The notes under the pieces are model-generated. The model did not search any database and had not been told where the DNA came from. It saw only the letters and a list, made by a program, of their open reading frames with translations. A DNA stretch of 64,000 bases from Lepidodermella squamata. Taxonomy: Eukaryota > Animalia > Gastrotricha. Positions 11,337-56,691 of this stretch are shown one piece after another. Where the stretch lies: the NCBI GenBank assembly GCA_047495785.1, contig JBLDXI010000033.1:1-64000 (forward strand), given 5' to 3'. Every line of letters begins with the position of its first letter. Positions within the stretch are counted from its first letter, which is position 1. The translations under genes and the position numbers were made by a program.

Positions 11337-11889
11337 GGGGTGAGGGGGAAGCACCGTCCCCTCCAACGACGTGGAGGGGATCTCCAAGGGGTGGTTCGAG
11401 TCCTTACCCATTACCCAGGAGAGTAGAGAAAAGAAAGAAAAGGCTAGCGCAGCGTTAGCCTTGTGGAACTCTCCTGGATGGGGGCGCGACTCTGGGAGTT
11501 CCGAAGGAACGCCAGTTCCTTTACGCGTGTTTTACACATACGCCGTAGATTACCACGAACGAAGTGAGATTTCATCCCAACAGGGGGGCCCGAGAACGCG
11601 TTGGTTAACAGGACATACTCCGATCGACTTGCCCGATTTATGGTGGTATCCTGGACCCCTCAGGACCTCCCAGAAACTTTTTCAGCTCAATCGGACCTTC
11701 CGTTGATTTTCTAGAAATTAGGACGGTTTTTTCTTATTTTACCGTATTTTTTGGTCACGTGACCTGAAATGGGTAGTATATGAGGGGACAGTAGGAGGAT
11801 ATGATAGGTACACCAAAAAACAAACCACGCTGACCAAAGCTTCCCAGCCAGCTGACAGGCTGGCCCCTCGCCCCTGGGGGAGAGGGGCC
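11337..11889 (+). other. Conserved hairpin-rich junction module, copy 1
   Basis: GGGGTGAGGGGG, stem CCCCTCCA/TGGAGGGG, AGGGGTGGTTCGAGT, CCAGGAGAGT/ACTCTCCTGG, GC-GCA-GC and GTTCC-GAA-GGAAC triloop hairpins, and terminal GGCCCCTC..GAGGGGCC hairpin (11862-11889). Confidence 0.85.
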
Positions 11890-13804
11890 CACAATAGATC
11901 AACAATGCAAGCTCGCGACTAAAGAGCAAACGACAAAAAGGCAATATAAATAAAATGCAAGGTCAATTGAAAAGACGTGAGGCAAATAAATTGTGAATTA
12001 TGCATTTAAAGCAACAGAATTACCCGTAATCGACTACGGAGAATCCGAATACGACATTCATTTTGTTAAAGCAATGATAATCCAATGATAATCACTTCAA
12101 CAAATTTCGCGCTCGAGCAGCTGCGTTACGGACTACGGAGAATCCGAATATGACATTTATTTCATTATCGAAATATGATAACCCATGATAACCCTTCAAA
12201 CCATTTTCGCCCTCCTTTTACCCACTTTCGCCGCGCCACTTGCGTATTTTCACCACGAGTTGCGTATCTTTCACCACCTAACAACTTACGACGCATCACT
12301 GTTGAGGTAAGAAACTTCGAACAAGCACTTCAAATTATGCGCCACATCGACCCATCGACATCGAGCTGCGTATCGCTGAGGACCATCTCATCATTGTTGT
12401 AAATTCAGTCATTCATGTACACTGATGATTGTTATACGTTATACGTATGTGTTCCTTGTGATATGAGTTCTTTGAGAACCTTGTGGAATATGTGTTAAAC
12501 GTGATTCACCACAAAAGATCCGCCTTGAAACACAGCTAACTTACACTGCCTTTTTGTGTCCATTGCCATAGAAGGTGCATTTTGCACATTAATCTATGGG
12601 TTTACCCGTAATCGACTACGGAGAATCCGAATATGACATCCATTTTATTATAAAGCAATCCTAACCCCATGATAATCCTTCCAATAATTTTCCAAAAATG
12701 TTCCGGCTCGCGCGGCTGCGCCGCACTCGCTGAAAGAGTTGCGTAACTTTAACCACCTTACAACTTAACGAATCCTCACCGATGAGGTAAGAAACTTGCA
12801 AGTGTGAATATGCACAGTTTCACATAGCAAAAACCAGCAAGTTGGACATGGCACCCCATTAAAAAACCAAATTAGCCAAATTAGCTGAACATGTTCTTTA
12901 CGAAGAAATGTTTCATATTTCGACGTTTTCGTCATCAACAATTTTTTATATTATTTAATTCAACCCTGCTTGATATTTTACAAACATTATTCGAAACTTC
13001 TAAGAAAGGTCCATAAAGTTTCACATTTCACAAAATGCATTTTTATTTTTCATTCATGCTACTACGAAGTACTAATGATAGCGCGGTACAATAACAAACA
13101 CGTTGACATATGATATCTCAACGAAGCCGTCATTCACCAGATCTGGATACGGAATCCTCGCCACTTAATTCAACGTTGATTAATATTTTGCAAACATTTT
13201 TCGAAACTTTTAAGTATCCCAGTAGGGTCCAAAAAGTTCAACATTTCCCTTGACAATACCCTCGGGAAGTAGCTGTAGCGCTGTGTTACCCCGATTAATT
13301 TTTACAACAACCTCTCGAAACTTCGAAACTTTAGCTCAAACCTTCTTGTTTTGTTCTTTTTGCGTTCTCGTCATCAGTGACATGGATTCTACCAATTCAT
13401 GTCATTCAATTGTTACCCTGATTGTTTTTTTACAACAAACTCTCGAAACTTCGAAACTTCAAAACATGGTCGTGGGTTCGAACCAGATCTCTCCTTTTTC
13501 TACTCATCAATTTGTTCTTCAACCTGCACGCATTCGTTGTTGGCGTTTTCGTCATCAGCTACATCGATTCTACCAATTCATGTCATTCAATTGTTAACTC
13601 GATTTTACAACATCTTCTCGAAATTTTATGAAAGCGAATAAATGTTCAACTACTCTTTAACGTGCATTCTTCTCTAAATATTTCCAAGCCATTCAAAAAT
13701 ACGTTGGACGGTTCCTGAGCGAACCCGAAATTACTACTTATCTATAAACACCTAATCCGGAGAACATTCAAATTTACAATTCAATTTCATGTTTCATCAA
13801 CATT

Positions 13805-14355
13805 GGGGTGAGGGGGAAGCACCGTCCCCTCCAACGACGTGGAGGGGATCTCGTAGGGGTGGTTCGAGTCCGTACCCATTACCCAGGAGAGTAGAGAAAA
13901 AGAAAGAAAAGGCTAGCGCAGCGTAAGCCTTGTCGAACTCTCCTGGATGGGGGCGCGATATGAGAGTTCCGAAGGAACGTAGTTCCTTACAAGTGTTTTA
14001 CACATACGCCGTAGATTACCACGAACGAAGTGAGATACCTTCCGAAAGGCACCCCCCGGGAACGAGTTGGTTAATAGGACATACTCAGATCAACTTACCC
14101 GATTTATGGTGGTATCCTGGACCCCTCAGGACCTCCCAGAAGTTTTTTCAGCTCAATCGGAGCTTCCGTTGATTTTCTAGAAATTAGGACGGTTTTTTCT
14201 TATTTTACCGTATTTTTTGGTCACGTGACCTGAAATGGGTAGTATATGAGGGGACAGTAGGAGGATATGATAGGTACACCAAAAAACAAACCACGCTGAC
14301 CAAAGCTTCCCAGCCAGCTGACAGGCTGGCCCCTCGCCCCTGGGGGAGAGGGGCC
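13805..14355 (+). other. Junction module, copy 2
   Basis: Same elements as copy 1, with a variant segment after GGGGGCGCG (13957). Confidence 0.85.
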
Positions 14356-16945
14356 CACAATAGATCAACAATGCAAGCTCGCGACTAAAGAGCAAACGAC
14401 AAAAAGGCAATATAAATAAAATGCAAGGTCAATTGAAAAGACGTGAGGCAAATAAATTGTGAATTATGCATTTAAAGCAACAGAATTACCCGTAATCGAC
14501 TACGGAGAATCCGAATACGACATTCATTTTGTTAAAGCAATGATAATCCAATGATAATCACTTCAACAAATTTCGCGCTCGAGCAGCTGCGTTACGGACT
14601 ACGGAGAATCCGAATATGACATTTATTTCATTATCGAAATATGATAACCCATGATAACCCTTCAAACCATTTTCGCCCTCCTTTTACCCACTTTCGCCGC
14701 GCCACTTGCGTATTTTCACCACGAGTTGCGTATCTTTCACCACCTAACAACTTACGACGCATCACTGTTGAGGTAAGAAACTTCGAACAAGCACTTCAAA
14801 TTATGCGCCACATCGACCCATCGACATCGAGCTGCGTATCGCTGAGGACCATCTCATCATTGTTGTAAATTCAGTCATTCATGTACACTGATGATTGTTA
14901 TACGTTATACGTATGTGTTCCTTGTGATATGAGTTCTTTGAGAACCTTGTGGAATATGTGTTAAACGTGATTCACCACAAAAGATCCGCCTTGAAACACA
15001 GCTAACTTACACTGCCTTTTTGTGTCCATTGCCATAGAAGGTGCATTTTGCACATTAATCTATGGGTTTACCCGTAATCGACTACGGAGAATCCGAATAT
15101 GACATCCATTTTATTATAAAGCAATCCTAACCCCATGATAATCCTTCCAATAATTTTCCAAAAATGTTCCGGCTCGCGCGGCTGCGCCGCACTCGCTGAA
15201 AGAGTTGCGTAACTTTAACCACCTTACAACTTAACGAATCCTCACCGATGAGGTAAGAAACTTGCAAGTGTGAATATGCACAGTTTCACATAGCAAAAAC
15301 CAGCAAGTTGGACATGGCACCCCATTAAAAAACCAAATTAGCCAAATTAGCTGAACATGTTCTTTACGAAGAAATGTTTCATATTTCGACGTTTTCGTCA
15401 TCAACAATTTTTTATATTATTTAATTCAACCCTGCTTGATATTTTACAAACATTATTCGAAACTTCTAAGAAAGGTCCATAAAGTTTCACATTTCACAAA
15501 ATGCATTTTTATTTTTCATTCATGCTACTACGAAGTACTAATGATAGCGCGGTACAATAACAAACACGTTGACATATGATATCTCAACGAAGCCGTCATT
15601 CACCAGATCTGGATACGGAATCCTCGCCACTTAATTCAACGTTGATTAATATTTTGCAAACATTTTTCGAAACTTTTAAGTATCCCAGTAGGGTCCAAAA
15701 AGTTCAACATTTCCCTTGACAATACCCTCGGGAAGTAGCTGTAGCGCCAGTTTTTTCGAGCTGTACGGCTCTGTGATGCATTACTCAAATTTCGAACTCG
15801 TAAATGGGAGGGAAACCAGATCCTTCACAACTTCACTGGTCTTCTTTTTATAACAAAATCATTCCATCCCATATCTTGCGTCACACGCCGCGTTCACACG
15901 CGCATGATTGAGGTTGGAGGTCTTCGACTTTAAAATGATAACCCTACCAGCAATCCGTGCTAACGATTACGTCAGCCGGGAAAGTTCATCTTTTTCGGAC
16001 CTTCATCAGCGGGAACGATTACGTCTCATAAAAAAACTAGTTGTTCCCTTCCACGGTCCCGTATATTTCGCGTTGCAGAGATTGTGGATGTTCCCCAGGC
16101 AAAATTGAACTTTAAAGTACAAGTTCCCAACTGCCGTATCGCGCGGAATAATTACTGCAAAGGTTTACCTGCCATTCTCGTTATCACTTCTAAATAACGT
16201 AAAACAGTCTCGTATCAATTTCGTTGATTTTCGATTTTCACTACATTTAAGGAAAATATATAGTTGGTGCTTGACGTACCGAAAAATGAGTGTGTAGTCT
16301 GATTCAATGTTAGGGTTCGTATTGTTCGCTTTTAGAGCGGCGTCCTTTTCAAGCTTCACTTTCCGCCCCGTTCACTTTCAAAGGAAGGTCGAGGGTTCGA
16401 ACCCAAGCTTTCGTTGAACTGCTCTCTAATGATTTCTGTCAACATGCTCTCGCTGTTGGCGATATTTGGTCATCGACTTCAATTCAACTTCAATTCAATC
16501 CTTGTCATTCAATTGTAACCTCAACAATTTGTTTTTCAAGAAATTACCGAAACTTCGGATAGTCGTTGGTTCGAACCCAAACCCTCGTTCAACTGCTCAG
16601 CAACGATTTCTTTCATCCGTATGCTCTCAATCTTGGCGTTAACGTCGTTACCGAAATCGATTTACCTTGTACATGTTATTCAATCGCACCCTGCTTGAAT
16701 TAGTATGCCAATTTTTTGAAAATTTAAAAGTTAAAAGGTCGAGGTTTCGAACCCAAGCTTTCGTTGAACTGCTTTGTGATGATTTCGTTCTCCTTCATGC
16801 AGCCAGAAGCTCTTGACGTCTAAATGCTCTCGTTTTCGGCGTCAACGTCATTACCGAGATCGATTCAGTTTGTACATTCAATCGCTCCCTCCTTCAATTT
16901 TTATAACAATCTCGTCATCAGTGACATGGATTCTACCAATTCATG

Positions 16946-17233
16946 AGCAGTAGGAATCGGCCGATCCTAGGCCAGCCACCTCAAAATAAAATTTTCATCT
17001 TTTATCATATTCTCCGCGGCAAATCTTCGGCTTTTCGCATAGCCCATGCGAAATGCAAAAATCATCACCAACGAGTCAAAATCACCGCCTAGGCATATCC
17101 AGCTCAAATTAAATTGAGTTTCACCGAACATCAGAATTTTCCGCTCTAAAAAATTTGAGAATAGCCTGAAAAGGGGTTGTTTTCAGAACACCACCTAGAA
17201 ATGAAATTTACTCCGGATAAGACGCCCTGCGCA
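16946..17233 (+). repeat. Polinton left terminal inverted repeat (~290 bp, imperfect)
   Basis: Reverse complement of 41091-41378 with scattered mismatches. Confidence 0.93.
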
Positions 17234-17711
17234 CTGTTTTTTCATTGCTAAAGGGTTACCCGTCAATCATGCGACGACGCCTGTGTAAATTTTGAATTTT
17301 CCGCCAAAGTAAAAAAGCATGCGGCAAATAATTATTAAATAAAAAAATAAAACATATCAATTTATTATTCCTAGTTAACATACATTCTGAAAATGAAGAA
17401 AATAACATAAACTTTTTTTTTATTCAAAGTGACCTTGACCGCAAGGTGCGTGGCGTGCACGGAACAGCCAAAACGAGTTTTTTCATGCTCTGGAACCTTC
17501 TTCCGGCGCTTTTAAACCGCTGCAGCTCCGCAGATCAGTATCATTCATGCGAATTACAACTTAACTCAATCGTTTCAGATAATGAATTTCGCGATTCTGT
17601 ATTTTTTATAATTTTATAATTTATAATTTATTAATTTATTTTAAATAATATTTTTGAATAAATTCATTTTTATTTATTTTTATTTATCTGTTTATTTTTA
17701 GATAAATTAAA

Positions 17712-18416
17712 ATGAATAATCTGGAAGACCTGGCCAATCAACTTGGAGCTAGTCATGCGAAATCTACTCTAAAAATTCTGGAGGAGATGGGCTTATCGGC
17801 AGCAGAACGACAGCCAATTGCTAAGGAGATAGATCGCATCAAGCCAAAGAAAGCAAAACTTATGAATAAAATTCAATACAATCAGCAATTAATTAAATCA
17901 ATCTTAGATAGGTGGCGACAAGATGAAAAAGTGAGTCTTTTTTTTTTATTTATGTTATGTCAACTGTTTTCTTAATATTTTTAGACTCCAAATCTTCACG
18001 CGCATAGAATTGGAGAATTATACAATCTTGTCATTTCTGCCGATACCGATATGCTTAGGAAAATGTTGGATTACTTAAAAACTTGCTTCTTACCCAGTAG
18101 TAATAGTGCAATTCTACAGACATATTATGATGACTTAAGCAATCTACTCAATCTTACTAAAGATACTGTTTTCTTTGTCTTGGAATATCATGTACTCGCT
18201 GTTAATTTAGAACAAGTCAAGGGAAAGGCTAAAGATATGGTAGCGAAGAAGTTAGCAAATGTGAACAATGTTATTGATAGTGCCATTCCTTCTATTATGA
18301 ATCCTTTTAGTCTACCTTCTCTTCAATCTAGCAATCATCCTGGATCTGATGTTGCCAACTCTTCGCTTGAAATTGATGAGATTTGTGACCAGTTGAAGGG
18401 AATAGCATCTGAATGA
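17712..18416 (+). CDS. Polinton cargo gene 1, 2 exons (17712-17930, 17985-18416), ~216 aa, unknown function
   Basis: Phase-0 intron GTGAGT...TTTAG joins two ORFs in frame; AATAAA at 18475. Confidence 0.7.
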
Positions 18417-18510
18417 GTGTTCAATCTATTTCTGAAAATTATGTTATGAACAATTATTTTGAAAAACCAAGTTCAATAAATCTGCAATTACAATCTTTCT
18501 ATATTTTTAG

Positions 18511-19433
18511 ATGAATGTTAGCAAAATATTTACTGATGCTATTGGGCGTGGGCGAAAGAAAACCAGAAATTCTCTGAAGCTCCGAATCGCGAAGAAATTC
18601 CATGCTGGCATCATGGCCCATAATAAGGATCTCAATGAAGTTCTGGCCTTCGTTGAAAAAGTCCGTCAATCGAAGCCTAATGAGCCAATGAAGCGCGTCA
18701 TCGACTTGGCTAAGAAACTTCCTGACGTTTCTTTGATTGAACCAGTTGAAACTAAGCGTCCGACGAAACCGAAGAAAAAACGTGCTGGCGAAGAGGCTGA
18801 ATATCAAGTCGTCGGCGACAACAGCGATGATGAATCTGGTATAGATGAAACAAGAGATGACGATGACGTAGCTTCTAATCATACGGCCTCCACTGAAGCT
18901 AGTAACGATGTTATTAAGGTACTGTATTAATTATTAATTGCTCGGAATTAAAACGATTCTGTCTTTAGATTTACGGCGCCGAATATGATATTAGCAGCAA
19001 CGACAAAATTTGTGATATGTTTGTTAAATTGTATAATGCTAGTTATGATGGTATTGCGAACTTAACTTCTATCACTGATTCCCGTTCTGTAGAATCGATT
19101 GTAGAGTTTGTAAAAGAAAAGCAAAAATCGTTCAATAAGATTAAAGGCCTACAATTGTTATGTTCTTACTATACTGCCGAAGCCGTCGATAAACTTTATG
19201 GAATGTTTGAAGATAAGAAAGAATTCTATAAACTTGTTTCTGTACAATTCAACTTCGGTAAAACATGGATATCTTATCTCTTAAAACTATTCAAATATTA
19301 TAGATCATATCCAAAGCTTATGAATTGTGCCATCCCGCTTAAACAAATGCTCTACTTAGCTGAAAATACTTCTATTCTAACATTCTTAGCTGGTAATAAA
19401 GCATTTTATGAGACATTAGGATCCAGAGTGTGA
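18511..19433 (+). CDS. Polinton cargo gene 2, 2 exons (18511-18918, 18969-19433), ~290 aa; basic NLS-like and acidic tracts, helical C-terminal domain
   Basis: Phase-0 intron GTACTG...TTTAG joins two ORFs in frame; KRPTKPKKKR followed by a D/E-rich tract. Confidence 0.72.
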
Positions 19434-19459
19434 TTACTTAAGCGTATCTCGTAAACTTG

Positions 19460-19774
19460 AAATCTTATGAATTATAAAATCTCATATTATGTGATCATTA
19501 TTATCATGGTATGTTACAGATTTGCGTTGTTCACCCAGGTGAACGTGAAATTCTGTTACAATCCTTTCATCGTTAAATCTTATGAATTATAAAATCTCGT
19601 ATTATGTGTTCATTATTATCATGGTATGTTACAGATTTGCGTTGTTCACCCAGGTGAACGTGAAATTCTGTTACAATCCTATCATCGTTAAATCTTATGA
19701 ATTATAAAATCTCGTATTATGTGTTCATTATTATCATGGTATGTTACAGATTTGCGTTGTTCACCCAGGTGAAC
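19460..19774. repeat. 115-bp tandem repeat x~2.7 between convergent genes
   Basis: Units start at 19460, 19575, 19690; each contains the quasi-palindrome GTTCACC-CA-GGTGAAC. Confidence 0.92.
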
Positions 19775-19903
19775 AGTGTGCTATTAATTGAATCAGTCGA
19801 GCTTGATTGAATGATCAAAATTATGATTAATGCCTAATAAAATTAATAAGGAATAAGTAATAAGTACCGGTGTTTTTATCTGTAGTAATAGCAGCTTTAC
19901 ACA

Positions 19904-22900
19904 TCACACTGATACATTGCGTATAAATGAGTGTCCATGCGCATATGTGCTCACGCCGTCGCTGCGTACCCATCTTTTATCATCATATGGACATAGCGCT
20001 ACTTTAGTACTTTGAATAGTTACCAGCTTATGATTAAACGATCGAATTTGATTGAACGTAGCTTTAGTCACTACATGCTTCAATACGCAATCTTTATAGT
20101 TTTCAAATTGTATCTGCTTTTTCACACAATGTTTGACAACTCCTTTAGCTTTCTTTACTGATGTCTGTTTATAGAGCCCAGAGTTATCTCCAGCACTCGA
20201 AATTACTGTAGATTTAAAGCTATATGATTTGGATCTCAAGCCAACGAATTCAGTAATGGTTGAAAGGGTAATACCTCCCGCGCATTCATCTTTGAACTTA
20301 CCAATAACTTTCTTGTTCATGTTTGAATGCAATGCGTGATCTTTAGGGTAATCACTGAAGTCCATCAGTTCTTTGAGACTTTCCATGTCCTTATATATAT
20401 CTGCTGTTTCTACATGATAACACAGTGAATCAGTATCAGTGAATAAGAGCTTCGCTTTATCGCCATAACTATTCTTTATCACGTTGTAATGAAAATCATA
20501 CATTAGAGTTTTCGATAATTCTAAAACGCTGAAACCGACAATAATCGGACGATCAAATTTAATTGATGTTTTTGCCATATTTACGCTGCATAAATCTTCG
20601 GCAATCACTTTGGCATCTTTGAAATTTGGCTTGTTTATCAATTTTTGTAATTTCGTGGATTGAGTCACAAGTCTAACGTCAACTCTTTTTCTTAGATTCT
20701 CCATAGTTTTTCCGAATACGGCATTATTCATTAATTTGAAGAAGTCTTTTTCAAAGTCATTTTTAGCTTCACTTCTTTTCTTAGTATTAAATTCAATATA
20801 CGGTGCCAGCCATTTGGACTGCTCAAAGATCAACACTTTATGCACTTTTTTCAAAACCAAACCCATTTTCAATGCCTGCTTCAGGTTTCTGTAATGAATA
20901 ATATAGCGAGTCTTGTCATATAGATTTTGAGTCAGCTTTTTCATGACTGGCGGTTTCGGCAGCTTCAATTCTTGGATAACATTTTGCATGAAAGGGCTAG
21001 GGTTGCAACTTGTCTGCTCAGGGCAGAATGGATAGTCATTATGCGCATCGTGCAGCGTTGCAGGATATTCTAAATCTACCATAAACATATATCCAGTGTT
21101 ATCATCATCTCCTAAATTCATTATAAATTCGGTGGTATATTTATCCAAGTTATTTTCCCATTGATATCGTCCCAATGGTAATACTTGTGACATGGCATAG
21201 CCGTAAAGATTATTAGCATCCAGGTATATTATATATGAATCAGGCTTCGCCGGATCGTATTCTAACATGTATTTGTTGTTTGCTCCTGCATATCTATGAG
21301 TAATTACGCTGACACCGCCTCGAATTCCCTCCTCTACAAATGTTAGCATTTCTTCGTTATCTAATAGTTCGATTTGAACTCCGGTTTTCTTCAACATGGC
21401 ATCCCAGGACAAGCTTGGTGCCGTTAAATAATGAGCAGGATCCAAAGTATAATACTTCATACATGTTTCCCTGAAACTTTCGAAACAATCAGCTAAAAGT
21501 AACACATCAGTTTTCAAATAAAGGTTATGATAGTCTTTCAGTTTTCGACAGCCAAATTCATTATATACACGTTTAGCGTGTTCATAATCTTCTCGTGATA
21601 TTGGTACCCGCTCTAATTTCTCATCTATTGAACTTGAGTGAAGGCTGCTAGAAAAATGTTCAATATCTGGTAGCGAAGGCTCCTCCAATTTTTCAGGGCC
21701 ATCCATATATTCATAGGGATAAAATCCCTTCTGTTTTATCAGATCTAATTGCAGGTCTGTCAACCTCGAAAATTGACTCTTTAAATGAGGAAACGCTCCG
21801 TTTGATTTTTTCAAATTTTGTACCAAATCAGCCAAACTTATTGACATGAAATTAAGACTATCCATGAACCTTAATTTTCCAACGTTGAAGGAAATGAATT
21901 TCTCTGAGCTATTCGCAATCGCTCCTATCTGTAGCAGAGGTTTCTTGCTACGATTTTTCTGATCCTTTGGTAATTTATCCCTTTCTTTTATTCTTTCCTC
22001 ATTTATTTCCTCTATCACTTTTCCAGCTGCCTGTAAAATCAAATGTGCATCATAACCTTTCAAATTATGAAATACAACTGGTATATTGATATTTCTATAG
22101 CTATATTTCAAGTTACATAAACTATGAGCTGCACCTCTGTAATAACCTGTCAGATGATCATGATCTCGCACTTTTTTCAATTTCTCTGAATCATTGACAA
22201 TGACGCCTTTGCAAATATGACACTGTGATGCCTTATTGTATTCCATTTCTTGTTGCCTTGTCAATTGCATCGCCTTGTTGGTATTTCTCAGATATGTACT
22301 CAAAAAAGATTCGGTTTTTATCAAATATCTCAGAAATTTCTCAGTGCATTCCTCGCCCTCAAATTTTACATACCGTGAGGTGATGCTATCCACATCACTT
22401 GCAAGGTAAGCACCAAAAGAGTTCGCTACATGTTTCTGAAAAATATTCGAGTTTTCTCCCTTTTTCTCATCTGTTTTAACCAGGAAACTCTCTGCGTCGC
22501 AATAAAATACAAATGGTATTTTTAGTTGTTTGCCATAATTTTTAAACATAACCGATTCGCCCTTGGGCATTTCAACTTTAACTTTCCCATTTTTCTCATT
22601 GCACTTCTGTCTATCAATATGTTGTTGCTTTGACTCAGCGCTATTAAAACCTTGAAAACATTTGAAACACCAGAATCGCTTATGCTCATGCTTGTTCACT
22701 CGTGATAAAAGTGCACTTGGATTTTTAATCCAGCAGTAATGTGCTTGCTTATTTTCAACAATTCTGAGCAGATTAACTTCTTCTCGAAATTTTTTATCTG
22801 ATACGTAAAACGGGAAGAGGACCTCCTTATCAATTTTCCCACATTCAATAATGTTGATTCGTATTTTATTCATATCTTCCAATTTCGATATATCTTTAAT

Positions 22901-24145: not shown

Positions 24146-24148
24146 TCT

Positions 24149-24261
24149 TATATATATTATATTAAGAAAATAATTCCTTATATAGAAATTTCAATTTTTT
24201 TCTTTTTCCATATTCTTTTTGGAAATGCTTAAAGAATTATTTTCTTGATATAATATATATA
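24149..24261. promoter_or_regulatory. Divergent promoter pair (inverted ~30-bp duplicate ending in TATATATA) for polB and the AT-hook ORF
   Basis: GAATTATTTTCTTRATATAATATATATA occurs on the minus strand at ~24149-24176 and on the plus strand at ~24234-24261, each just upstream of an ATG. Confidence 0.65.
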
Positions 24262-24271
24262 GAAATTCACT

Positions 24272-24523
24272 ATGACAACAATTAATAAGCAACCCAGAGG
24301 TAGACCTAAAAAATACCTGACAGAAGAAGAAAAATTATTAGCATATAAAGAGGTTCATAAAAACAGCTGTAAGAAGTACTGGCGTGAAACGTTTCACATG
24401 GCGCAATTGAACGATACGATTCTTAATACGACAGATAAGCTGTTGGTTATTTCAGAAAAGCAATTGGAGGAACTTGTCAGTAACATCATCGCGAATAAAT
24501 TGAAAAATATTTTCTTGACTTGA
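24272..24523 (+). CDS. Small AT-hook DNA-binding protein, 83 aa
   Basis: PRGRPKKY AT-hook motif followed by a helical segment. Confidence 0.7.
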   Translation: MTTINKQPRGRPKKYLTEEEKLLAYKEVHKNSCKKYWRETFHMAQLNDTILNTTDKLLVISEKQLEELVSNIIANKLKNIFLT

Positions 24524-24643
24524 TATATAGATGTGAAATATAAATATTACTTAACGCATTGAAGCCAGTTTGAACTCATTCTTATATATCCACCCTTTTC
24601 CCATTTTGACTCAGTAGGGAGTAATTCATAAATGCATCACTCT

Positions 24644-26110: not shown

Positions 26111-26185
26111 TTCTGAAGTATAGCTAGAAGTTCAATGGTTTTAAAAAATCCTAATATTTTCTAAATTTCTAATATATTTATAAGA

Positions 26186-40891: not shown

Positions 40892-41090
40892 AAAAATTCA
40901 GGCCAATGAATACCGCCACATGCCTTATTGAAAAAAAATGTACACTTAAATATTACTTTGAATAAACGAAAAAACGTTTTAAGCCACTGCGGATTTTTTA
41001 ATGTCGCAATGAATAGACATTCTCTGTAAGAAGGTTCAATGAGTTATTTTTGCCTTTCACAATGCCGAGTGCCAAATGATGAAAATCCAT

Positions 41091-45749: not shown

Positions 45750-45956
45750 TGTAAGGAGCGGAGTGAAAACAAGAAGCTATTTGCCAAGTATTGCCTTTAT
45801 TAATAACGAGAATATTTAATAATACAAACTGAATCAATACAGAAACAAAGATGTTTATATATGTCCATGGAATAATCTGGAACATAGAAGGTTCCAGAAC
45901 AGGAAAGTTCCAGAGCATGGAAGGTTCCAGAACATAGAATGTTCTAGATCCTCACA
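45750..45956 (-). mobile_element. Solo LTR (207 bp) containing a heat-shock-element array
   Basis: TG...CA ends, 5-bp TSD GAATT (45745-45749, 45957-45961); on the minus strand TATATAAA (45861-45854) then AATAAA (45801-45796). Confidence 0.85.
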
Positions 45957-48401
45957 GAATTGTCTAAAAATTTGAAATCTCTGAGTTTGAACCCTCGCTC
46001 TCGTTAAACTGCTCTCCAACGAATTCTTTCATCTGTATGCTCTCCTTCACTGCGTTATCCTCACCGGGAACATGGATTCAACTAATCCCAGTCATTCAAT
46101 TGTACTTTGCTCAATGTTTTCAAAGAATTTTGTGAACAATTGAAATTTCAAAGTAACATCAAGGGTTCGAACCCAAGGTCACGTTAAACTGCTCTCCTAT
46201 GATTTCTGTCACCCTCGTGGTCTCGTTCTCGGCGTTTTCGTCATCCACGACATCGATTTGACTGTTATGGTCAAAGTAACCAAATTCGTTCGCAAACCAA
46301 GCATCACCGTTGTAAATATTAGCTGAAAATATTTCAGTTCGAACGTGTAGACGACGAACATCCCATATCTTGCGTCACACGCCGCGTTCACACGCGCATG
46401 ATTGAGGTTGGAACATTTCTTCTGCCACTTTGAGGTCTTCGACTTTAAAATGATAACCCTACCAGCAATCCGTGCTAACGATTCCGTCAGCCGGGAAAAG
46501 TTCATCTTTTTCGGACCTTCATCAGCAGGAACGATTACGTCTCATAAAAAACTAGTTGTTCCCTTCCACGGTCCCGTATATTTCGCGTTGCAGAGATTGT
46601 GGATGTTCCCCAGCCAAAATTGAGCTTTAAAGTACAAGTTCCAAACTGCCGTATCGCGCGGGATAATCACTGCAAAGGTTTACCTGCCATTCTCGTTATC
46701 ACTTCTAAATAAAGTAAAACAGTCTCGTATCAGTTTCGTTGATTTTCGATTTTCACTACATTTAAGGGAAATATATAGTTGGTGCTTGACGTACCGAAAA
46801 ATGAGTGTGTAGTCTGATTCAATGTTAGGGTTCGTGTTGTTCGCTTTTAGAGCGGCGTCCTTTTCAAGCTTCACTTTCCGCCCCGTTCACTTTCAAAGGA
46901 AGGTCGAGGGTTCGAACCCAAGCTGTCGTTGAACTGCTCTCTAATGATTTCTGTCAACATGTTCTCGCTGTTGGCGATATTTCGTCATCGACTTCAATTC
47001 AACTTCAATTCAATCCTTGTCATTCAATTGTAACCTCAACAATTTGTTTTTCTAGAAATGACCGAAACTTCGGATAGTCGTTGGTTCGAACCCAAACCCT
47101 CGTTCAACTGCTCAGCAACGATTTCTTTCATCCGTATGCTCTCAATCTTGGCGTTAACGTCGTTACCGAAATCGATTTACCTTGTACATGTTATTCAATC
47201 GCACCCTGCTTGAATTATTATGACAATTTTTTGAAAATTTGAAAGTTAAAAGGTCGAGGTTTCGAACCCAAGCTTTTGTTGAACTGCTTTGTGATGATTT
47301 CGTTCACCTTCATGCAGCCAGAAGCTCTTGACGTCTAAATGCTGTCGTTTTCGGCGTCAACGTCATTACCGAGATCGATTTAGTTTGTACATATCATTCA
47401 ATCGCTCCCTCCTTCAATTTTTATAACAATTTTCTGAAAATTTGGAATTTTAAAGGAACGGCAAGGGTTCGAACCCAAGCTGACGTTCAGCCGCTCTCCA
47501 AGGAATTCTTGCATCCGTATGCTCTCGTTCTCGGCGTTTTCGTCATCAGCAACATCGATTCAACTTATCCTTGTCATTCAATTGTATCCTGATCAATTAT
47601 TTTTAATTTGTTTACCAAAATTTGAAATTCAAAAAGAAGACCGATTGTTTGTTACAACAACCTCTCGAAACTTCGAAACTTCAGCTCAAACCTTCTTTTT
47701 TGTTCTTTTTGCGTTCTCGTCATCAGTGAGATCGATTCTACCAATTCATGTCATTCAATTGTTACCCCGATTAATTTTTACAACAACCTCTCGAAACTTT
47801 GAAACTTCAGCTCAAACCTTCTTGTTTCGTTCTTTCCGTTCTCTTCATCAGTGAGATCGATTCTCCCAATTCATGTCATTCAATTGTTACCCCGATTAAT
47901 TGTTACAACAACCTCTCAAAACTTCGAATCTTCAAAACATGGTCGTGGGTTCGAACCCGATCTCTCTTTTTTCTACTATTCAAACTGTTCTTTAACCTTA
48001 ACGCATTCGTTCTTGGCGTTTTGGTCATCAGCTACATCGATTCTACTAATCCATGTCATTCAATTGTTAACCTGATTTTACAACTTTGAAATTTTACATC
48101 TTCTCGAAATAACAATACATTAACAATAATAGGAATTTACAATCAGCTACATCGATTCTACTAATCCATGTCACTCAATTGTTAACCCGATTTTACAACA
48201 TCTTCTCGAAACTTTGAAATTTTATGAAAGCGAATAAATGTTCAACTACTCTTTAACGTGCATTCTTCTCAAAATATTTTCCTAGCCATTCAATAATACG
48301 TTGGAAGGTTCCTGAGCGAACCCGAAATTACTGCTTATCTATCAAGACCTAATCCGAAGAACATTCTAATTTACAATTAAATTTCAAATGTCATCAGCAT
48401 T

Positions 48402-48976
48402 GGGGTGAGGGGGAAGCACCGTCCCCTCCAACGACGTGGAGGGGATCTCCAAGGGGTGGTTCGAGTCCTTACCCATTACCCAGGAGAGTAGAGAAAAGAA
48501 AGAAAAGGCTAGCGCAGCGTTAGCCTTGTGGAACTCTCCTGGATGGGGGCGCGCGACAGATGGCCGAAGGCCATCCTCCTAGGGACCGAAGGTCCCCCAC
48601 ACCTATCAATACTGCGCTATTAACAACCGACAACAGGAGGGGTAGTGTACAAAAATTGGCCCGTTTGACCGAGTTGACTAGCAAGGAAAACTCCGATTGG
48701 GTTGATTTTTTTTTTGTAGGATCCCTAACCCTTTGGGACCTCCCACAACTCTTTTCAGAATGATCGGAGCTTCCGACTATTTTTGGCGAATTATGCTAAT
48801 TTTGCTCTATGAGCAACTCATTTGCATATGCAAATTAGCTTGGAGGTAGTATACCATAGGGCAGTAGGAGGATACGATGTGTACTCCGAAAAACGAAGCA
48901 TGCTTTGCTAATCTTCTGAGACTTTCTACAGAAGCCAGCCACCGAGCTGGCCCCTCGCCCCTGGGGGAGAGGGGCC
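48402..48976 (+). other. Junction module, copy 4 (upstream of the RepHel gene)
   Basis: Identical to copy 1 up to GGGGGCGCG (48553), then diverged but homologous; hairpin at 48949-48976. Confidence 0.85.
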
Positions 48977-51900
48977 GACAAAAAATATGTGATCTCTTGG
49001 CCTGTTCTGTTGGCTTGCCCCGCCCGAAAACGCCTCGCACTCTTAAAAAGCCCAATCTTGCCACAACCATTTGGCGTTTCACAGGCGGAGAGGATGTTGT
49101 TTCTGATGTTGTTGTTCGTCTTGTCAAGTTCATACTTGCGGTCGCCGTCCCAGTTGTCGACGCAGAACTGGGTATGAACGGATCTGAATCGCTAACGGTG
49201 TTGCGAGGTCGTGTTAACAATCCGCTAACAATGCAGCTGAGAAATTCCGGTAAGATAATGGTTTCATCTACGTCTCACCATTATGGAATAAATATATCTA
49301 GTTGCTGGAGTCTGCGTTTCAGTTGATGGCAATGAGCAGCTGCTGTCTGGCTACGTGTCAACAAAGGAGCTCCTACTTTGTCAAGTCGGGGCCGGTAGCC
49401 TGATCAAATGGCACAATCTTCCCAGTGACATTCGAGGCATTCATCATCTTGTCCTTGTTGTCGTGGAACACGGTCACAAAATCTACGTCTTATCCCGCTG
49501 GTCCGGGACCTTTTCCGGCTGGTGGACGATTAAGCCGAACGGTCAAGTTCTTCGGGACGTCGCTGATTACTTCAAGCGGTCAGTTCTTCGCTTTGCGCTA
49601 TATGCCAAGTCAGGTGATCAACAATTCTGGAACGAAGCGGTTCGCGAATCGCTAGGTGGGCAAAGCAAGGCTGCTTGCGCCGATCACTTCCAGGAGGATA
49701 GCTTTAAATTCAGCCTCATCAAGGTCCCGGCAAAGCACAAGGTCAAGTGCTGCAATCGCTTACTGAGTGGCATTCAATGTGGCAAGGTTGCTTACTGGCG
49801 ATGTCCACATGGCTTGGATAACAATAACTTGAGCTGCACAGTTGGGGTTTGTCCTCAGTGCTGGAAACGGTTGCCGTCCGATGTGGTCACCAAGATCGAT
49901 CAACCTGGTTTTCTGCCAGTAATCCCCGAACAGGAGGAGGCGGAGTCTGACTCAACCAGTTCAGCTTCATCACGGCGAGAAAGCTTCGGTGAATTGCCAT
50001 TTATTGAAGGAGATGGTGCATCTTCATCTTCATCTGAATCGGATCGCGGCGATCTCTTTCCGCAAGCTGATGCGGTTCCAATGTATGACCCAACCAAAGG
50101 TATTCTGGCCAAGTACCTCTGGGATCATTTGAGCATCTTGCACCGTAACAAGCTCAAACGCGACTCCGCCCAGAGGTCTTTCTTGCTGCAGCAGCTGGTT
50201 TCTACTGGCGATGCGCCTGCAGCATCGATACTTTATCCCGAAGGCGCACTCTTTCCGTCGCTTTGCTTTGCGCAGAGAGAGGGCAGCGTGATTGGGGCCA
50301 TCCCTTTCCACCACTACAGTTCTGCTGTCTCAAATCATCCCGGTGGCATCGCGTCGCTCTCGGCTCACGCGAAAATTCGCCTTCGCAACATTTTCCTAGC
50401 TTCCAGCTGGTCTTTTGGAGCTATTTCCTTCTACCATGATGTTGCGGTCATGGTAAAGCTCAACTGCAATAGCACCACCAGCTTCTTGCGTTACGGAAGC
50501 GAGGCCTTCGTCGACAAGGGCGCTTTGGCGTATTCACAGCAAGGGTCTGCCCTCGAATACGATGAATTCGACTCCATGGGTAAGCTGAAAGAGATCAGTG
50601 TCATGGTGAAGCACGAGCCCTGGAATCTTTTCGGGACCGTCACTTGTAGTGATACAGGTATATAGTAGTTTTATTATTCGCAGGATAAATTATTCATAGA
50701 GCCTTAAGCCAATTTCACTGTTCTTCTATGGTTAAGGAAAGTTACGATATCTCAATACGTTGGGAACTAAATGACTCAGGCTTATATTTTCCTGTGATTA
50801 ACGTTGCATTCTCTCTATAATTTCCACTTAATTTGTTTCTAGGAACGCCCGGTGTTTGCCAGATAATTAAGGCGCTCATGATCAACGCTCAGCTACATCA
50901 GGGTCCTGAACCCGTCTTGAACAAGGCAGATTATAAGCGGTCGCCTTGGCAAATGTTGCAGCTGCAACAATCACTTGATCCGGTGAAGTACAAGCGCCTT
51001 TACAATGCATATTCTGTCTTCATCAACATGGCATGGCAGCGAACCCAGCATCACCTCATTGAGCTACTGAAGCGTACCAACCTGGTCGGTAACATCTCAA
51101 CCATATTTGTTCGGAACGAATTTCAAAGCGAGGACGCAATCGGGAACAAGAGCCATCTGCATATGGGCATTCATGTCACGGATGCTCCCGATACTATCAT
51201 CAGCAAGATTTGTTGCGATCCCTGTGAGTTCTTCTCTGAGCAGTATGGCACCGACTATGAGTCGCTCAGGCGCCTGGGTTTCGTGCAGACTTTTGACCAC
51301 TTCCTGCTAATGCAGGAGTACCATCGACCGCTTATTCGCCACTCATGCGAAAGTGCCAGGTTCAAATGCATGGTTCCTCGCGGTGAAAACGGCGAGATGA
51401 TTTGCCGCGTTCGGAAGCACGGTGTATCCTCCGTTGATTACTTCGAGCCGAAGAAGAACCTGTATTCCGAGGAAACTTGCGATGAGTTCGAGACCTTGGG
51501 CCTAGCACGTCGTGTTGCTACAAACGACCCCAACGGGCCTGACACTGAGTGGGACATTCTGCCGGATGCTCTCCGAGCTGGAGCGTATCATTACGCTATA
51601 AAACACCTTGAGAAGGACGTAACGTTCCTGCCGAGTATTCCCATCGTTTCCGTAATGATGGGTTCTTCAACAAACTGGCAACGATGCGACAACCGGTTCA
51701 GTGCTTCATATCTCACCAGCTACTCTGTCGGCTCTGAACCACGTGGTTACGTGTTTTTTGCGGGAACCGATGTGCCTGGTCAGGTTGTTGCTCAATTCCC
51801 AGCTGGCATCGAGAGGAACCAAAAGCTGCCTAGTGTTCGGTAACACATATTTTTTCATTTTAGAGTTCTTGTACAAGTAATTCGTTAAATTTAGTAAACT

Positions 51901-54900
51901 GATGGAGAAACAGTTGAAGCAAGTAAGTCAGGATGTCAAGCAACGCTGCCTTTTCATTGCGTTCACTGAAGTTATATGGTTTACGCTCGGTTACCCTTAC
52001 ACACTTTGTAATGTGTCATTCGTTCACGTCAACACGCACCCACCAGCTATGCGCTTCATGTACTGGCGACAAAATGCCCAAACTCCCGGTCGCTTGCAAC
52101 CCGGCTCAGATGAAAGTGTGTTTGACCCAAATCGGAAGCGGAGAAATCTACCCTTGTGGCGACAGCACAGTGCTATGTCCATCTTTTTGGCATCGCATGT
52201 TCGAGGCTCGACGTTGAGTCCTGGAAAGATGGAGAGATTCGATATTCGATTCCCGGAGGGGCGGATTTTCACCAGCATTGCGCTGTTTTTCTCAATCTTC
52301 GTCGCAGCTACAGGGTACCGCAGGCCGTATGATCCTGAAAGGGACACGATGATTCGGTTCTTCGATCCGCTCGGAAAAGAGTACCTCATTTGGGATTGTT
52401 CGTTGCATCTCGCCATGCAATTTCTCGAACAGCAGGACCCTGCTGATCCTGCCGTGCAAGCCCTAATGAACATTTTCGAGAACCTCATCGAAGGCAATCC
52501 TGCTTATACCGCCTTGTGAGTTTCACCACATTAAGTACTTGCAACGATTTGCTATAACCTTTTCATTTCCTCCCATGTAAGGTACTTGAAAGTTTCTAAC
52601 CAAGCCGCGGTTTTGCCAGTGTTATCGTCAACAACTCCCAATCATCGCTTTTTCTTCCTGTATCATGTCGTACTCTCTTTGGGAAAAATTGATAGCGAAG
52701 CTCAGATCTTCCAGGCTGGTCACCTCCGTGAAGCTTTCGTCCGAGCTCAGCTGATTCGTGTGGACCCAGTGACTAACGAGCCGACTCACCTGGAACAGGA
52801 TGTCAATGCGATGAAAAGGCGAATTATCTTGGAACAGTTTGCTTGGTTACCGGTGCCGGTCAAGAAATTCGAATTTCACGTACGCCAGCTGAGAGACTTG
52901 TTTCACGAGTTCTTCTTTGGCGATGGTGGAACCGACGACTTCTCGCCGGTTACTGATCGTACAGCAATCCAGTACGAGATGGACGAGGACATTCGCCTAG
53001 CCGAAGATGACATCAAGTCGACGCTATTGAAATCGCTGTATTCGCAGCTGGAGAACAAGCTTCCATTGCCGCCGATAGTTGACCTTCAGCGATCAACGCA
53101 GGCCGAGCCCATCGACTGGCAACCTCAGCTTCAGCGTCAACCTGGCCAAACCGACGAATCCTTGGCAGAGCAGGCAAAAACGCTTACCTATGGCCTTGAA
53201 AGCCTCGATAGGTTTCAGAAAAACGTGTCACCAACAAACCATTTAGCTTTGGTGGGGCCTCCTGGTGCAGGAAAAACAACCCTGGCTCAAATCCTTGCTC
53301 TGGCAGCTATCGGTCGAGGCCTAACCGTCGCTCTAACTGCCCTGACTTCAGAAAGGGCTAGATCGCTAGGTGGACGTCATCTCAATCTCATGTTTCCACT
53401 GCCAGTTACTGAGTCACCTTACAGATCGAGTCTTGCTTATACTGACTACTGTCTTCGCGGTTTGGCTTCGAAAACGAAATTGTCAGTACTTCTGTACAGA
53501 ACAGATGTCATCATTCTCGAAGAAATTGGTCTGGTTTCGTCTGAAACGCTCGAGGTCATCGACCTTGTCATGAGAACCCTGACAGGTTTGTTAATTTCAT
53601 TATAAGTTCTGAAAGTACCTCTCCAACCTATTCTAGGATTGAATGCGAAAATGGGCGGTAAATTGATAATCGCCACCGGTGACTACAGCCAGCTCAAGTG
53701 TATTGATGGCCGGTCGTTTTGGGAGTCAACGCAGCTATACTTGTGCTATGACGTTGCACTACTGAAGCATTTTGTTCGAGCCGCACAGGATCAACTGCTA
53801 CAGCAAGCCCTAAATGTTCTGCGCCAATCAGTATTGGATGAAGCGGATCGCCGCCTGGTCGTTGAGGCAGTCAGCGCCTGCTGCAAGTTCTATAATGACT
53901 GGTCGGATGTGCCTTTTGATGTGCAGCGTCTCGTGCCTACTCGCAGAGCCGAACAAGAAGTCATACACAATTTTCTGGCTGCATCGGAGCGCAGCGGCAA
54001 GGTCATGCTGTCAGCTGATGCTCGGGACGAAGTTCAACGTCAAGGCATATGGGTGGCTACGCTTCGTGGCGATCACAAAAACTACCTTGATCGACTAACG
54101 CTGAAGCCGCAAAAACTCACGCTTTTTGTTGGGGCAGTCGTCTGCATGACGTACAACTTCAATGCTTCGACACCCGCCAGTTCCTTCTCACAAGGTCAAC
54201 TTGCAATTGTTGAAAAACTGCCCGCGGATCTGAATGCAGATGGTGCGAAAATCGTTCTCAAGCTTGTTCCGCCTGGTAGTCGCGACATTGAACATAGCTC
54301 TGGTTGGACAACAATCACAGTTGGTCGCCATGACGAAGACAATGTCGTTTTCGGCGAAACGAAGCAGCATCTTAGGCGTGTTCAATTTGGCATTCGCCAC
54401 TATATCGCGTCGACCATCCACCGCATTATGGGTTCAACGTGTGAAAACGGTGTAGCTGTCAAGATTTCTCATGCAGAAAAAGGTTACATCCTTTGGGAAC
54501 GGGCTCAGCTGACAGTTATACTGTCGAGATGTCGGTCGCTTGAAATGGTGGCGTTTGTCGGCTCCGAGGACGAGGTTCTTTTGGCTATTAATCAATTGCT
54601 CATCCTGCAGGACGAGGAATATGCTCGAATCGTTCGAAACCTGCTTAGAATCAATGTCCTTCGGGATGGCTTTGTCCGCGGATCGCGGATTGTTTGGCAT
54701 CGAGCACGCCCGGAAGCTTTCGCGCCGCCAAGCCAAGAAAATATCAACTACGCTACTTTTCCGTGAGTCACTCTATCTGTTTCCATTTTCAGCTTCAAGT
54801 ATAACATTACTTAGCATCAACCTCTTGTCAACGCAGCCGGCAACTGCTAACCCTCAGCTTGCTCCTCTTCCTGGGACATCAACCCCATCTACCAGCCGAC

Positions 54901-56320
54901 GACCTCTGAATCCCGGTGCGATTTTACCAGCGGCGCCTCGTGTGGTTACAGGTCTATTTCAACCAATCGGTCCCGCCCATTTTGAGGATGAACCATTTGG
55001 ATTTGTGTACCATATCGTTTCGCTCAGCCGACCTTGGCACAGCTATTACGGAGAAACCACGTATTCCCCGATCAAACGCTTGTCTGAACACAATAACAGT
55101 ATGATGTTAATGTAAGTTATATCTCTCTTCATTATCCGTCTTTTAATTAGATGCGGGGGCTGTCATGACTCGTGGCGACCAGTGGCTGCTCTACGCAGTC
55201 GTCTCCCAGCTGTCAAGTCGGCGAGAGCGGATGTATCTCGAGGCAGAAATGCATCGAATACTTCGCCGGTATCCCCGAATTTTGCCATGGCAATTGCGAG
55301 CGCGACTATTCAACGTCGTGGCCAACTGGCAAATGTACAACCGGAGTGCCGCAGTTGTCATCCACATGAGTGACCTCAATGAAGGCGAAGTTCGGCGACG
55401 CCTTACAGCTCGAGCAGCGTTAAGGAATGGTGATCTGCCAGGTTTGTGCCGAAAGCTATTTATATCTTTTATCACTGAATTTACTGTTTACGTTTGTTAA
55501 CCCAAATGAAGAGAGCGATTTCCTTGATGGCATTAATCGCCCGGTTGGTTGCGTTACAACCGGGGATCCAAACGCGCCAGGTGAATTTATTAACTGTCAA
55601 ATTATTTGCTAATTTTTTATTTGTAAACAGCTGATTGTCCGCCAGAACTTTTCCAAATGCCACTTACCCTCGCGGATGTCTTGTCGCTGCAACCGGCGCC
55701 CATTCCGCGGCAACGCCAACCTCAGCCGCTAATTCTACCAGTGCAGGAAGACAGGTGCCACTGTGGCGAGGAGATTTTCGGAGCGTGCTGCTGCGCTTAC
55801 CATCAGGCGCACTTTCCGGAGCTGCTATGCCACGACCACTTCATGGCCAGCCAGTGCAGCGCTCCGCAGGAGGAAAACACGCAAGCATAAATCTTCCAAA
55901 CAAGTCGCTACTAATGGTGTCATCATTAGGGCCCGGTATCGCCCCTATCCGGGGTCACAAGTACCTCGCGTATTTGTTGACCACCACCGAGTAGACACAC
56001 CACGGTGCATGTCTATGAAGGGAGGGGCCCTTTCTTCAAAAACACACAAATGCCGGTATTAAAGGTATTGATTGATTCATTTATTTTTACTTACACATTT
56101 TACTTACAAGGACTTACACATCTATATTCATTCTCTGTTTAAACTTTTTCGGGGTGAGGGGGATTCACATCCCCTCCAATGACCTGGAGGGGATCACTCA
56201 TAGGGGTGGTTCGAGTTATTACGCCGTGCGCAGCACCCAGAAGAATAGAGAAAGAAATACACGAAAAGGCTCCGCGCAGCGGACATCCTCTCGTCGCATC
56301 GTTCTGGATGAGTGGCGCCG
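48554..56320 (+). mobile_element. Candidate autonomous Helitron-like rolling-circle element (exact ends inferred)
   Basis: RepHel-GIY-YIG gene bracketed by junction modules 4 and 5 in direct orientation; no TSD seen. Confidence 0.7.
48877..55890 (+). CDS. Helitron-like RepHel: Zn finger + HUH(Y2) Rep + Pif1/SF1B helicase + GIY-YIG endonuclease + Cys/His tail; 10 exons, ~2126 aa (start uncertain)
   Basis: Exons 48877-49249, 49302-50657, 50843-51839, 51895-52515, 52582-53585, 53637-54762, 54815-55098, 55151-55441, 55512-55580, 55631-55890 splice into one open frame. Rep: PWNLFGTVT, RNEFQ..GNKSHLH, YLTSY. Helicase: GPPGAGKTT, LEEIG, GDYSQL, RVQF..STIH..G, QLTVILSR. GIY-YIG: GFVYHI..YYGET..RLSEHN..W.L..LE. 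Confidence 0.88.
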
Positions 56321-56691
56321 AAAAAAAAACATTTGCCGGAGGCAACAATAAAAAATTCCAAACCCGCCTTTACCTTTTCGACATAACGTAGTAAAACACC
56401 CCCCTTGAACAGCATCTAAGCAACTGTAAGGCCCACGTCCTCGAGCTTGGTGTCATTCGATAGCCCGTCATTTCAATATGCCAGCAAACCTTTTTCAGCC
56501 AGTTCGGGTGATTTTCCTATTTTTGGTGAATTTTTGAATAATTTATCGAAGTTGTTGCTGTTGTCGATCGATTGGAAAAAATCGATAATCGATAACAAAT
56601 TATAGGAGGATAGAGGTGGGCGCTTAAAAAATGAGGCTTGAGAAAAATAACGTTGCCTAACGCTGCCCTCCCCCATGCGGTGGGGGAGGGC
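56151..56691 (+). other. Junction module, copy 5 (strongly diverged, structure conserved)
   Basis: GGGGTGAGGGGG, CCCCTCCA/TGGAGGGG, AGGGGTGGTTCGAGT, CCAGAA/TTCTGG, TCCGC-GCA-GCGGA, TTGCC-GGA-GGCAA, TAGGAGGATA and an 11-bp GC hairpin at 56665-56691. Confidence 0.8.

What the first reader, a model, noticed from the sequence alone, without database searches (positions are those of the whole stretch)
11337..56691. Five copies of a structure-conserved module built from DNA-type C(GNA)G triloop hairpins: candidate ssDNA origin/terminus of the rolling-circle element
Seen: a ~550-bp module at 11337, 13805, 42530, 48402 and 56151 keeps the same order of elements while stems change compensatorily. Examples: GTTCC-GAA-GGAAC (11498), GATGGCC-GAA-GGCCATC and GGGACC-GAA-GGTCCC (48559, 48582), TTGCC-GGA-GGCAA (56333); TAGC-GCA-GC vs TCCGC-GCA-GCGGA (56271); CCAGGAGAGT/ACTCTCCTGG vs CCAGAA/TTCTGG; and a terminal GC hairpin. 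GGGGTGAGGGGG and AGGGGTGGTTCGAGT are invariant, and CCCCTC can pair with either flanking GAGGGG, which is switch-like. Established: C(GNA)G triloops are exceptionally stable in single-stranded DNA. Inference: selection acts on the folded ssDNA intermediate (Rep recognition site or single-strand origin). Alternatively, the GGTTCGAGT B-box drives a Pol III RNA acting as primer or guide for the RepHel-GIY-YIG protein.
Basis: partly seen in the sequence, partly recalled or inferred. Interest (0 to 1): 0.85.

Follow-up and report, generated by a model that had tools for sequence, protein, structure and literature searches.

The report
Joined ends of self-stacking rolling-circle transposons
The repeated module is the right end of one rolling-circle transposon joined to the left end of the next, in a divergent animal Helitron-like group that appears to insert into its own joints and so builds mixed head-to-tail chains.

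Summary
The five copies are real, but each is not one element. Each is the last ~140 nt of one unit joined at CTGG|ATG to the first ~410 nt of the next, in a head-to-tail array. The array holds non-autonomous units and one spliced Rep-helicase-GIY-YIG (RepHel) unit; a Polinton interrupts one unit. Copy 1 is the end of unit 4 joined to its own start. Related RepHel-GIY-YIG elements in three other assemblies share the junction: CTRGRTG in 42 of 43 junctions (window included). Where left and right halves swap, the crossover maps to 4 nt inside or just after that heptamer, and neighbouring units are only 44-93% alike. The DNA-type C(GNA)G hairpins are real: 9 of 11 plus-strand cases lie in the modules, none on the minus strand. 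They are restricted to one subclade. Covariation evidence is thin because copies 1-4 are near-identical upstream. The Pol III idea is unsupported. Best model: the junction is the nick site, serving as origin, terminus and preferred insertion target; the nick and the targeting are inferred, not shown. The protein clade is far from canonical Helitrons, and I found no description of it in the library searched.

The parts
10251..11477 (+). U1: 5'-truncated unit, identical to the last 1227 nt of U4
11337..11477 (+). c1 right end (RTS): G-tract, hairpin 11357-11380, four G-runs, stem closing on CTGG, inner GC-GCA-GC loop
11474..11480 (+). junction heptamer CTGG|ATG of c1; crossover from U4-end type to U4-start type maps to 11466-11488
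11478..11890 (+). c1 left end (LTS): GNA hairpin 11498-11510, overlapping C(GCCA)G hairpin, terminal G/C hairpin 11862-11889; second crossover to U3 type at 11697-11731
11478..13946 (+). U2: non-autonomous unit, 2469 nt, internal-deletion relative of U3
13805..14356 (+). c2 module: RTS of U2, junction 13943-13949, LTS of U3 with GNA hairpins at 13966 and 13972
13947..42671 (+). U3: non-autonomous unit of 4286 nt with ~125-nt internal satellites, interrupted by a Polinton
16946..41378 (.). Polinton/Maverick-like insertion in U3 (300-nt inverted ends, 6-nt duplication TTCATG); not part of the module
42530..43084 (+). c3 module: RTS of U3, junction 42668-42674, LTS of U4 with GNA hairpin at 42692
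42672..48542 (+). U4: non-autonomous unit, 5871 nt, with internal satellites
48402..48976 (+). c4 module: RTS of U4, junction 48539-48545, LTS of U5 with GNA hairpins 48559-48575 and 48582-48596, conserved LTS motif near 48693, terminal hairpin 48949-48976
48543..56307 (+). U5: putatively autonomous unit, 7765 nt; shares only its ends with U2-U4
49323..50662 (+). RepHel exon: N-terminal part and Rep motif 1 (LFGTVTCSD); boundaries approximate
50833..51843 (+). RepHel exon: HUH motif (RNEFQ...HLH) and two-tyrosine motif 3
51902..54766 (+). RepHel exons: linker and PIF1-like SF1 helicase (three exons)
54921..55450 (+). RepHel exons: C-terminal GIY-YIG nuclease (GFVY...YYGET...RLSEH)
56151..56691 (+). 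c5 module: RTS of U5 with GNA hairpins 56226-56236 and 56271-56283, junction 56304-56310, LTS of a further unit U6 with GNA hairpin 56333-56345 and terminal hairpin 56665-56691; the end of U6 was not found in the window

Best explanation
The module is the RTS|LTS (right end to left end) junction of a divergent Helitron-like element whose transposase is Rep(HUH,Y2)-PIF1 helicase-GIY-YIG. Shown: units abut head to tail at CTRG|RTG, non-autonomous units share only their ends with the coding unit, and left and right halves assort independently at that site. Inferred mechanism: Rep nicks the plus strand after CTRG, and the helicase peels that strand off. The displaced strand folds (GNA/GNNA mini-hairpins on both sides of the nick in this subclade). 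A second nick at the next CTRG closes a circle whose joint is the same RTS|LTS sequence. A joint in the chromosome looks like the circle's own origin, so Rep also uses existing joints as insertion targets, regenerating two joints per insertion and building mixed arrays. The role of GIY-YIG (second-strand cut or resolution of branched DNA) is a guess. Estimated probabilities: junction identity 0.9, plus-strand ssDNA selection on the GNA loops 0.75, junction-targeted insertion 0.65.
For: All 5 plus-strand CTGGATG of the window lie in the modules. U2-U4 match U5 only in the first ~440 and last ~130 nt. c1 is U4's end joined to U4's start, the joint a circle or concatemer gives. Three 99%-identical copies of a 25.75-kb relative end at the same site, each followed by a different left end. 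42 of 43 junctions from the window and three other assemblies read CTRGRTG (one CTGTGTG); 28 half-swap pairs place the crossover after offset 3 and before offset 8. Neighbouring short units are 44-93% identical and flank coding units. The Cyprideis modules align over the whole length, and its Rep is sister to the window's, support 99/96. A conserved motif sits about 120-147 nt after the heptamer in nearly all relatives' junctions and in c4. Helraiser is cut on the plus strand at its RTS-to-LTS joint (PMC5876387). d(GNA) loops with C:G closure are unusually stable in DNA (PMC3201870).
Against: No nick was observed; its position is inferred from the bracket and by analogy with CTRR. In the window alone the crossover bracket is 23 nt wide. 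c5 has a 7-nt stem (CACTCAT with ATGAGTG) spanning the supposed joint, which could mean this family's end lies a few bases further on. Ordinary recombination also acts on these arrays (second crossover at 11697-11731). No array end or empty site was seen. 34 of the 38 outside junctions come from one assembly. L003 and L005 showed no junction in the flanks held. The Cyprideis modules are antisense to the nearby RepHel gene. The window's motif 3 reads YLTSY, lacking the usual lysine, so U5 may be inactive.
Confidence: 0.7

Rival explanations
1. Same junction, but no targeting: arrays arise as rolling-circle concatemers of one unit, then diverge and are shuffled by unequal recombination, with crossovers favoured in the conserved joint.
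For: c1 and c2 are self-type joints; a crossover away from the heptamer exists; Helitron concatemers are reported in plants (cited in PMC11934779, and PMC5148889).
Against: 99%-identical young copies are each followed by a different 60-65%-related left end, with the break within 10 nt of the heptamer start. Too little shared sequence for repeated homologous crossover. 12-19 kb coding units sit precisely between 1.0-1.4 kb units.
Confidence: 0.2
2. The joint is right but the polarity or function of the folds is not: the element uses the minus strand, or the hairpins and G-runs act in duplex DNA (cruciform, G-quadruplex, triplex) or as promoter elements.
For: Cyprideis modules are antisense to the RepHel gene; four G-runs in window and Cyprideis right ends; palindromic factor-like sites in each left end.
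Against: GNA loops occur only on the plus strand; the plus strand ends in CTRG like Helitron CTRR; in the window and L006-L012 the joint and the gene are on the same strand.
Confidence: 0.07
3. A Pol III RNA or SINE: the GGTTCGAGTCC B-box drives a small RNA that primes or guides the transposase.
For: Perfect B-box word in c1-c4; the region folds better than shuffles (z -2.1 to -4.3 as DNA).
Against: No Rfam match. c5 lacks the final CC. No in-register A-box by inspection. B-box-like word in 1 of 21 related right ends. The same word recurs in the internal satellites. No target-site duplications or A-tails. GNA triloops are a DNA-stabilising motif.
Confidence: 0.03

Closest known systems
Helitron / HLE1 (e.g. 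Helraiser)
   Same: Rep(HUH,Y2)-PIF1 transposase; right end in CTRR-type tetranucleotide; RTS-to-LTS joints; non-autonomous units sharing only the ends.
   Different: Left end starts RTG, not TC. No A|T host target seen; every joint seen abuts another unit. C-terminal GIY-YIG in the same protein across the clade. The Rep profile reaches Helraiser only at E 2.7e-4. Pfam Helitron_like_N about 30 bits against 150 for a canonical member.
HLE2 (Helitron2, Helentron, DINE/HINE)
   Same: OTU domain in some relatives; internal satellites between conserved end modules; one moss HLE2 family has captured a GIY-YIG (PMC11417382).
   Different: No T|T target, no T start, no DUF6570 or AP endonuclease hit in 7 full-length relatives. 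Asymmetric inverted repeats not clearly present.
Paramecium Helitron clade (PMC13085455)
   Same: Divergent from HLE1 and HLE2; sequence-targeted insertion with fixed orientation; satellites inside; ORF in either orientation.
   Different: Ends in CCAA and targets telomeric repeats; GIY-YIG not mentioned in the paper; sequences could not be compared.
Tandem Helitron concatemers of plant centromeres (Xiong et al. 2016, cited in PMC11934779)
   Same: Head-to-tail arrays.
   Different: Attributed there to rolling-circle concatemers; here neighbours are different families, mixed with autonomous units.

Membership tests
Helitron-like elements (superfamily) | HUH Rep with two catalytic tyrosines fused to a PIF1-type helicase | tested here: met
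   Motifs conserved in alignment; Helitron_like_N hits 25 of 28 members at E up to 0.1; PIF1 hits; exon-wise tblastn
Helitron-like elements (superfamily) | Distinct left and right ends shared with non-autonomous derivatives, no target-site duplication | tested here: met
Helitron-like elements (superfamily) | Plus-strand nicking and circular intermediate | not testable with these tools
   Only indirect: c1 is a self-type joint
HLE1 | 3' end CTRR | tested here: met
   CTRG in 42 of 43 junctions, assuming the nick follows base 4
HLE1 | 5' end TC | tested here: not met
   No TC within the crossover bracket; starts RTG
HLE1 | Short hairpin just before the 3' end | tested here: inconclusive
   Window: stem including CTGG plus hairpin at -120; L010/L012 hairpin near -65; none of 6 bp or more close to the end in L006-L009
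HLE1 | Insertion between A and T | tested here: not met
   All junctions seen abut another unit; array ends were not seen
HLE2 | Starts with T and inserts in T|T or T|C | tested here: not met
HLE2 | Short asymmetric terminal inverted repeats | tested here: inconclusive
   The RTS G-tract is near-complementary to one arm of the LTS hairpin, but both lie 140 and 380 nt inside the ends
HLE2 | DUF6570 marker domain; AP endonuclease in Helentrons | tested here: not met
   No hit in P0003, P0005, P0006, P0011, P0019, P0042, P0162
HLE1 or HLE2 | Placement of RepHel in either clade of a reference phylogeny | tested here: inconclusive
   No reference set available; the one canonical protein sits on a 6.55 branch outside 36 clade members
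Paramecium Helitron clade | RTS ending CCAA, flanked by telomeric repeats | tested here: not met
tRNA-derived SINE / Pol III gene | A and B boxes in register, A-rich tail, target-site duplication | tested here: not met

The most novel reading that the evidence does not exclude
An undescribed, deep-branching animal clade of rolling-circle transposons (RepHel with integral GIY-YIG) that inserts site-specifically into its own right-end/left-end joints. It builds cassette-like arrays of unlike families, with lineage-specific extra-stable ssDNA mini-hairpins marking the joint.
Probability: 0.5. Interest if true: 0.78.

Novelty: new variant of a known kind. Interest (0 to 1): 0.62.

Why it matters
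Helitron target choice is usually a dinucleotide. An element that inserts precisely at a defined joint of its own kind would be a self-made safe harbour and a route to satellite-rich, Helitron-derived blocks in animal genomes. It would also be a candidate sequence-specific ssDNA integrase that leaves no duplication. The many natural end variants around one conserved heptamer make HUH origin and target recognition in eukaryotes directly testable. Tools built on TC/CTRR or TIR signals would probably miss these ends (inference).

Tried and rejected
Rfam and ARAGORN found only tRNAs at 6.3-6.8 kb. A DNA pattern scan of metagenome contigs gave one short hit with no further similarity, taken as chance. 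The word-based protein search with the HUH exon found nothing (length-limited); the full HMMER search did find relatives. The search for related loci found nothing in viral contigs, and the genome-contig scan could not run for lack of a conserved stretch. CTGGGTG in L005 lies in a splice-donor-like repeat and was rejected as a junction, as were the sites in L003. GNA loops as RNA UUCG or GNRA loops: rejected by inspection, the register does not fit. Junction-spanning pairing as an IS608-like guide: seen in window copies but not general in relatives. Triplex between the RTS G-tract and the LTS hairpin: a mirror match in window and Cyprideis, absent in other relatives, left as speculation. The spliced gene was searched exon by exon by reference; the joined-model search was left out. 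The host was not identified; it looks like an invertebrate animal and not human. The Polinton was only described.
Full report
Observation. The five modules exist at the stated places and every quoted motif was found. The C(GNA)G triloop enrichment is real and strand-specific. Of 11 plus-strand hairpins with stems of at least 4 bp in 64 kb, 9 lie in the modules, which make up about 4% of the window; none of the 5 minus-strand ones do. Shuffles predict about 0.04 per module. Copies 1 and 3 add a C(GCCA)G tetraloop at the place where copy 2 has C(GTA)G. GNA loops with C:G closure are known to be unusually stable in DNA (PMC3201870). The claim of covariation is weaker than stated. Copies 1-4 are nearly the same in the first 150 nt, so only copy 5 is informative. 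It gives 3 two-sided changes among 43 predicted pairs and no net covariation term. The downstream GNA stems cannot be aligned between types.

Layout. Self-comparison shows a head-to-tail array from 10251 to beyond 56691. A Polinton-like element with 300-nt inverted ends and a 6-nt duplication interrupts it at 16946-41378. Upstream and downstream halves of the module assort separately: upstream c1 equals c4 and c2 equals c3 (100%), downstream c1 equals c3 (98%) while c4 and c5 are at 48-58%. All five plus-strand CTGGATG words of the window sit at the switch. Cutting at CTGG|ATG gives units of 2469, 4286, 5871 and 7765 nt. The first three are non-coding with internal satellites and share with the last only about 440 nt at the start and 130 nt at the end. 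Copy 1 is the end of unit 4 joined to the start of unit 4, with the crossover at 11466-11488. A second crossover at 11697-11731 shows that ordinary recombination also acts here.

The protein. Unit 5 holds a spliced gene, analysed exon by exon; the joined-model search was left out. The HUH exon finds 122 relatives, including named proteins from Cyprideis, Styela and Myxine. Full-length relatives read (OTU)-Rep-PIF1-GIY-YIG, and they cover the window's exons in order. The window's GIY-YIG exon keeps the motif residues. The clade is far from canonical Helitrons. A search with Rep to GIY-YIG returned 26 clade members and then one canonical protein at E 2.8e-4. The Rep profile reaches Helraiser at E 2.7e-4, and the canonical protein lies on a very long branch. 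One outgroup cannot place the clade relative to HLE1 and HLE2.

Related loci. Three contigs of one assembly carry 99%-identical copies of a 25.75-kb relative. Each ends at the same site and is followed by a different, related left end. L009, L010 and L012 from the same assembly are arrays of 1.0-1.4 kb units (one 2.0 kb) with 12-19 kb coding units set between them; neighbours are 44-93% identical. The Cyprideis locus, whose Rep is sister to the window's, has two modules that align along the whole length: G-tract, hairpin, G-runs, CTGGATG and terminal hairpin. They lie antisense to the gene. L011, in the same subclade, has two CTGGATG joints with C(GNA)G and C(GNNA)G hairpins on the same strand. 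Across 43 junctions the heptamer is CTRGRTG in 42. Half-swap pairs bracket the crossover after offset 3 and before offset 8, and a conserved motif follows at about 120-147 nt. The heptamer alone is common by chance; the evidence is its fixed position at unit boundaries. The 20 representative junctions of the distant host that were tested have no GNA loops on the junction strand, so the loops are a subclade trait. L003 and L005 showed no junction in the flanks held.

Mechanism. Shown: the module is the joint between units, and it is conserved in position and core sequence across distant hosts. From established knowledge: Helraiser forms precise RTS-to-LTS joints from the plus strand and is cut there (PMC5876387). 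Inferred: Rep nicks after CTRG, the displaced plus strand folds, circles carry the same joint, and chromosomal joints are reused as targets, which explains precise joints between unlike families. The main rival is concatemer formation followed by recombination. It fits copies 1 and 2 but fits poorly the young identical copies followed by unlike neighbours. The Pol III reading lacks support. The task of GIY-YIG is unknown; a second-strand cut or branch resolution is my guess, with only weak SLX1 similarity (E 0.013).

Comparison and novelty. It works like a Helitron and belongs to the superfamily. It fails defining end features of HLE1 (TC start, AT target), of HLE2 (T start, TT target, DUF6570) and of the Paramecium clade. 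Tandem Helitrons and one captured GIY-YIG are known. Ten literature searches found no description of this clade or of junction-targeted mixed arrays, but the library lacks most subscription journals and Repbase, and HELIANO mentions unclassified clusters that I could not compare. Verdict: new variant of a known kind, interest 0.62.

Noticed in passing
window 16946-41378: Polinton/Maverick-like element with integrase-chromo-PLA2, A32-like ATPase and VLTF3-like genes, inserted in a satellite of unit 3.
   Followed up: partly
window 25628-29607: 100%-identical 783- and 322-nt tandem duplications inside the Polinton, repeating a PLA2-like ORF; recent amplification or assembly artefact.
   Followed up: no
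window 11753-11764, 48820-48835, 56580-56595: Each left-end type has a different palindromic factor-like site at a similar place (E-box-like, double octamer-like, DRE-like; names from memory). The RepHel gene starts shortly after the c4 left end, so the left end may hold the promoter.
   Followed up: no
window 11337-11348 with 11862-11889; L002 27488 and 28544 with 26988 and 28027: The right-end G-tract is the mirror image of the purine arm of the left-end terminal hairpin in both hosts, compatible with a purine triplex; four G-runs also allow a G-quadruplex.
   Followed up: partly
window 56196-56202 with 56308-56314: CACTCAT upstream pairs with ATGAGTG just after the joint in c5; CCCAT with ATGGG in c1-c4. 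Pairing across the supposed joint is unexplained.
   Followed up: partly
window 10251-11160, 13284-13626, 41379-48220: ~125-nt satellites containing the palindromic word GGGTTCGAACCC inside the non-autonomous units, as in HINE-type elements.
   Followed up: no
L010 and L012 junctions: A near-invariant 9-bp hairpin about 65 nt before the joint, followed by a ~25-nt segment that differs between unit types; could be a family-specific recognition tag.
   Followed up: no
L002 26988-28560: Cyprideis modules lie antisense to the neighbouring RepHel gene, as in some Fusarium and Paramecium Helitrons.
   Followed up: no
window 6357-6844; 60233-62659: Cluster of tRNA genes or pseudogenes; a LINE-type endonuclease-reverse transcriptase ORF downstream of the array.
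   Followed up: no
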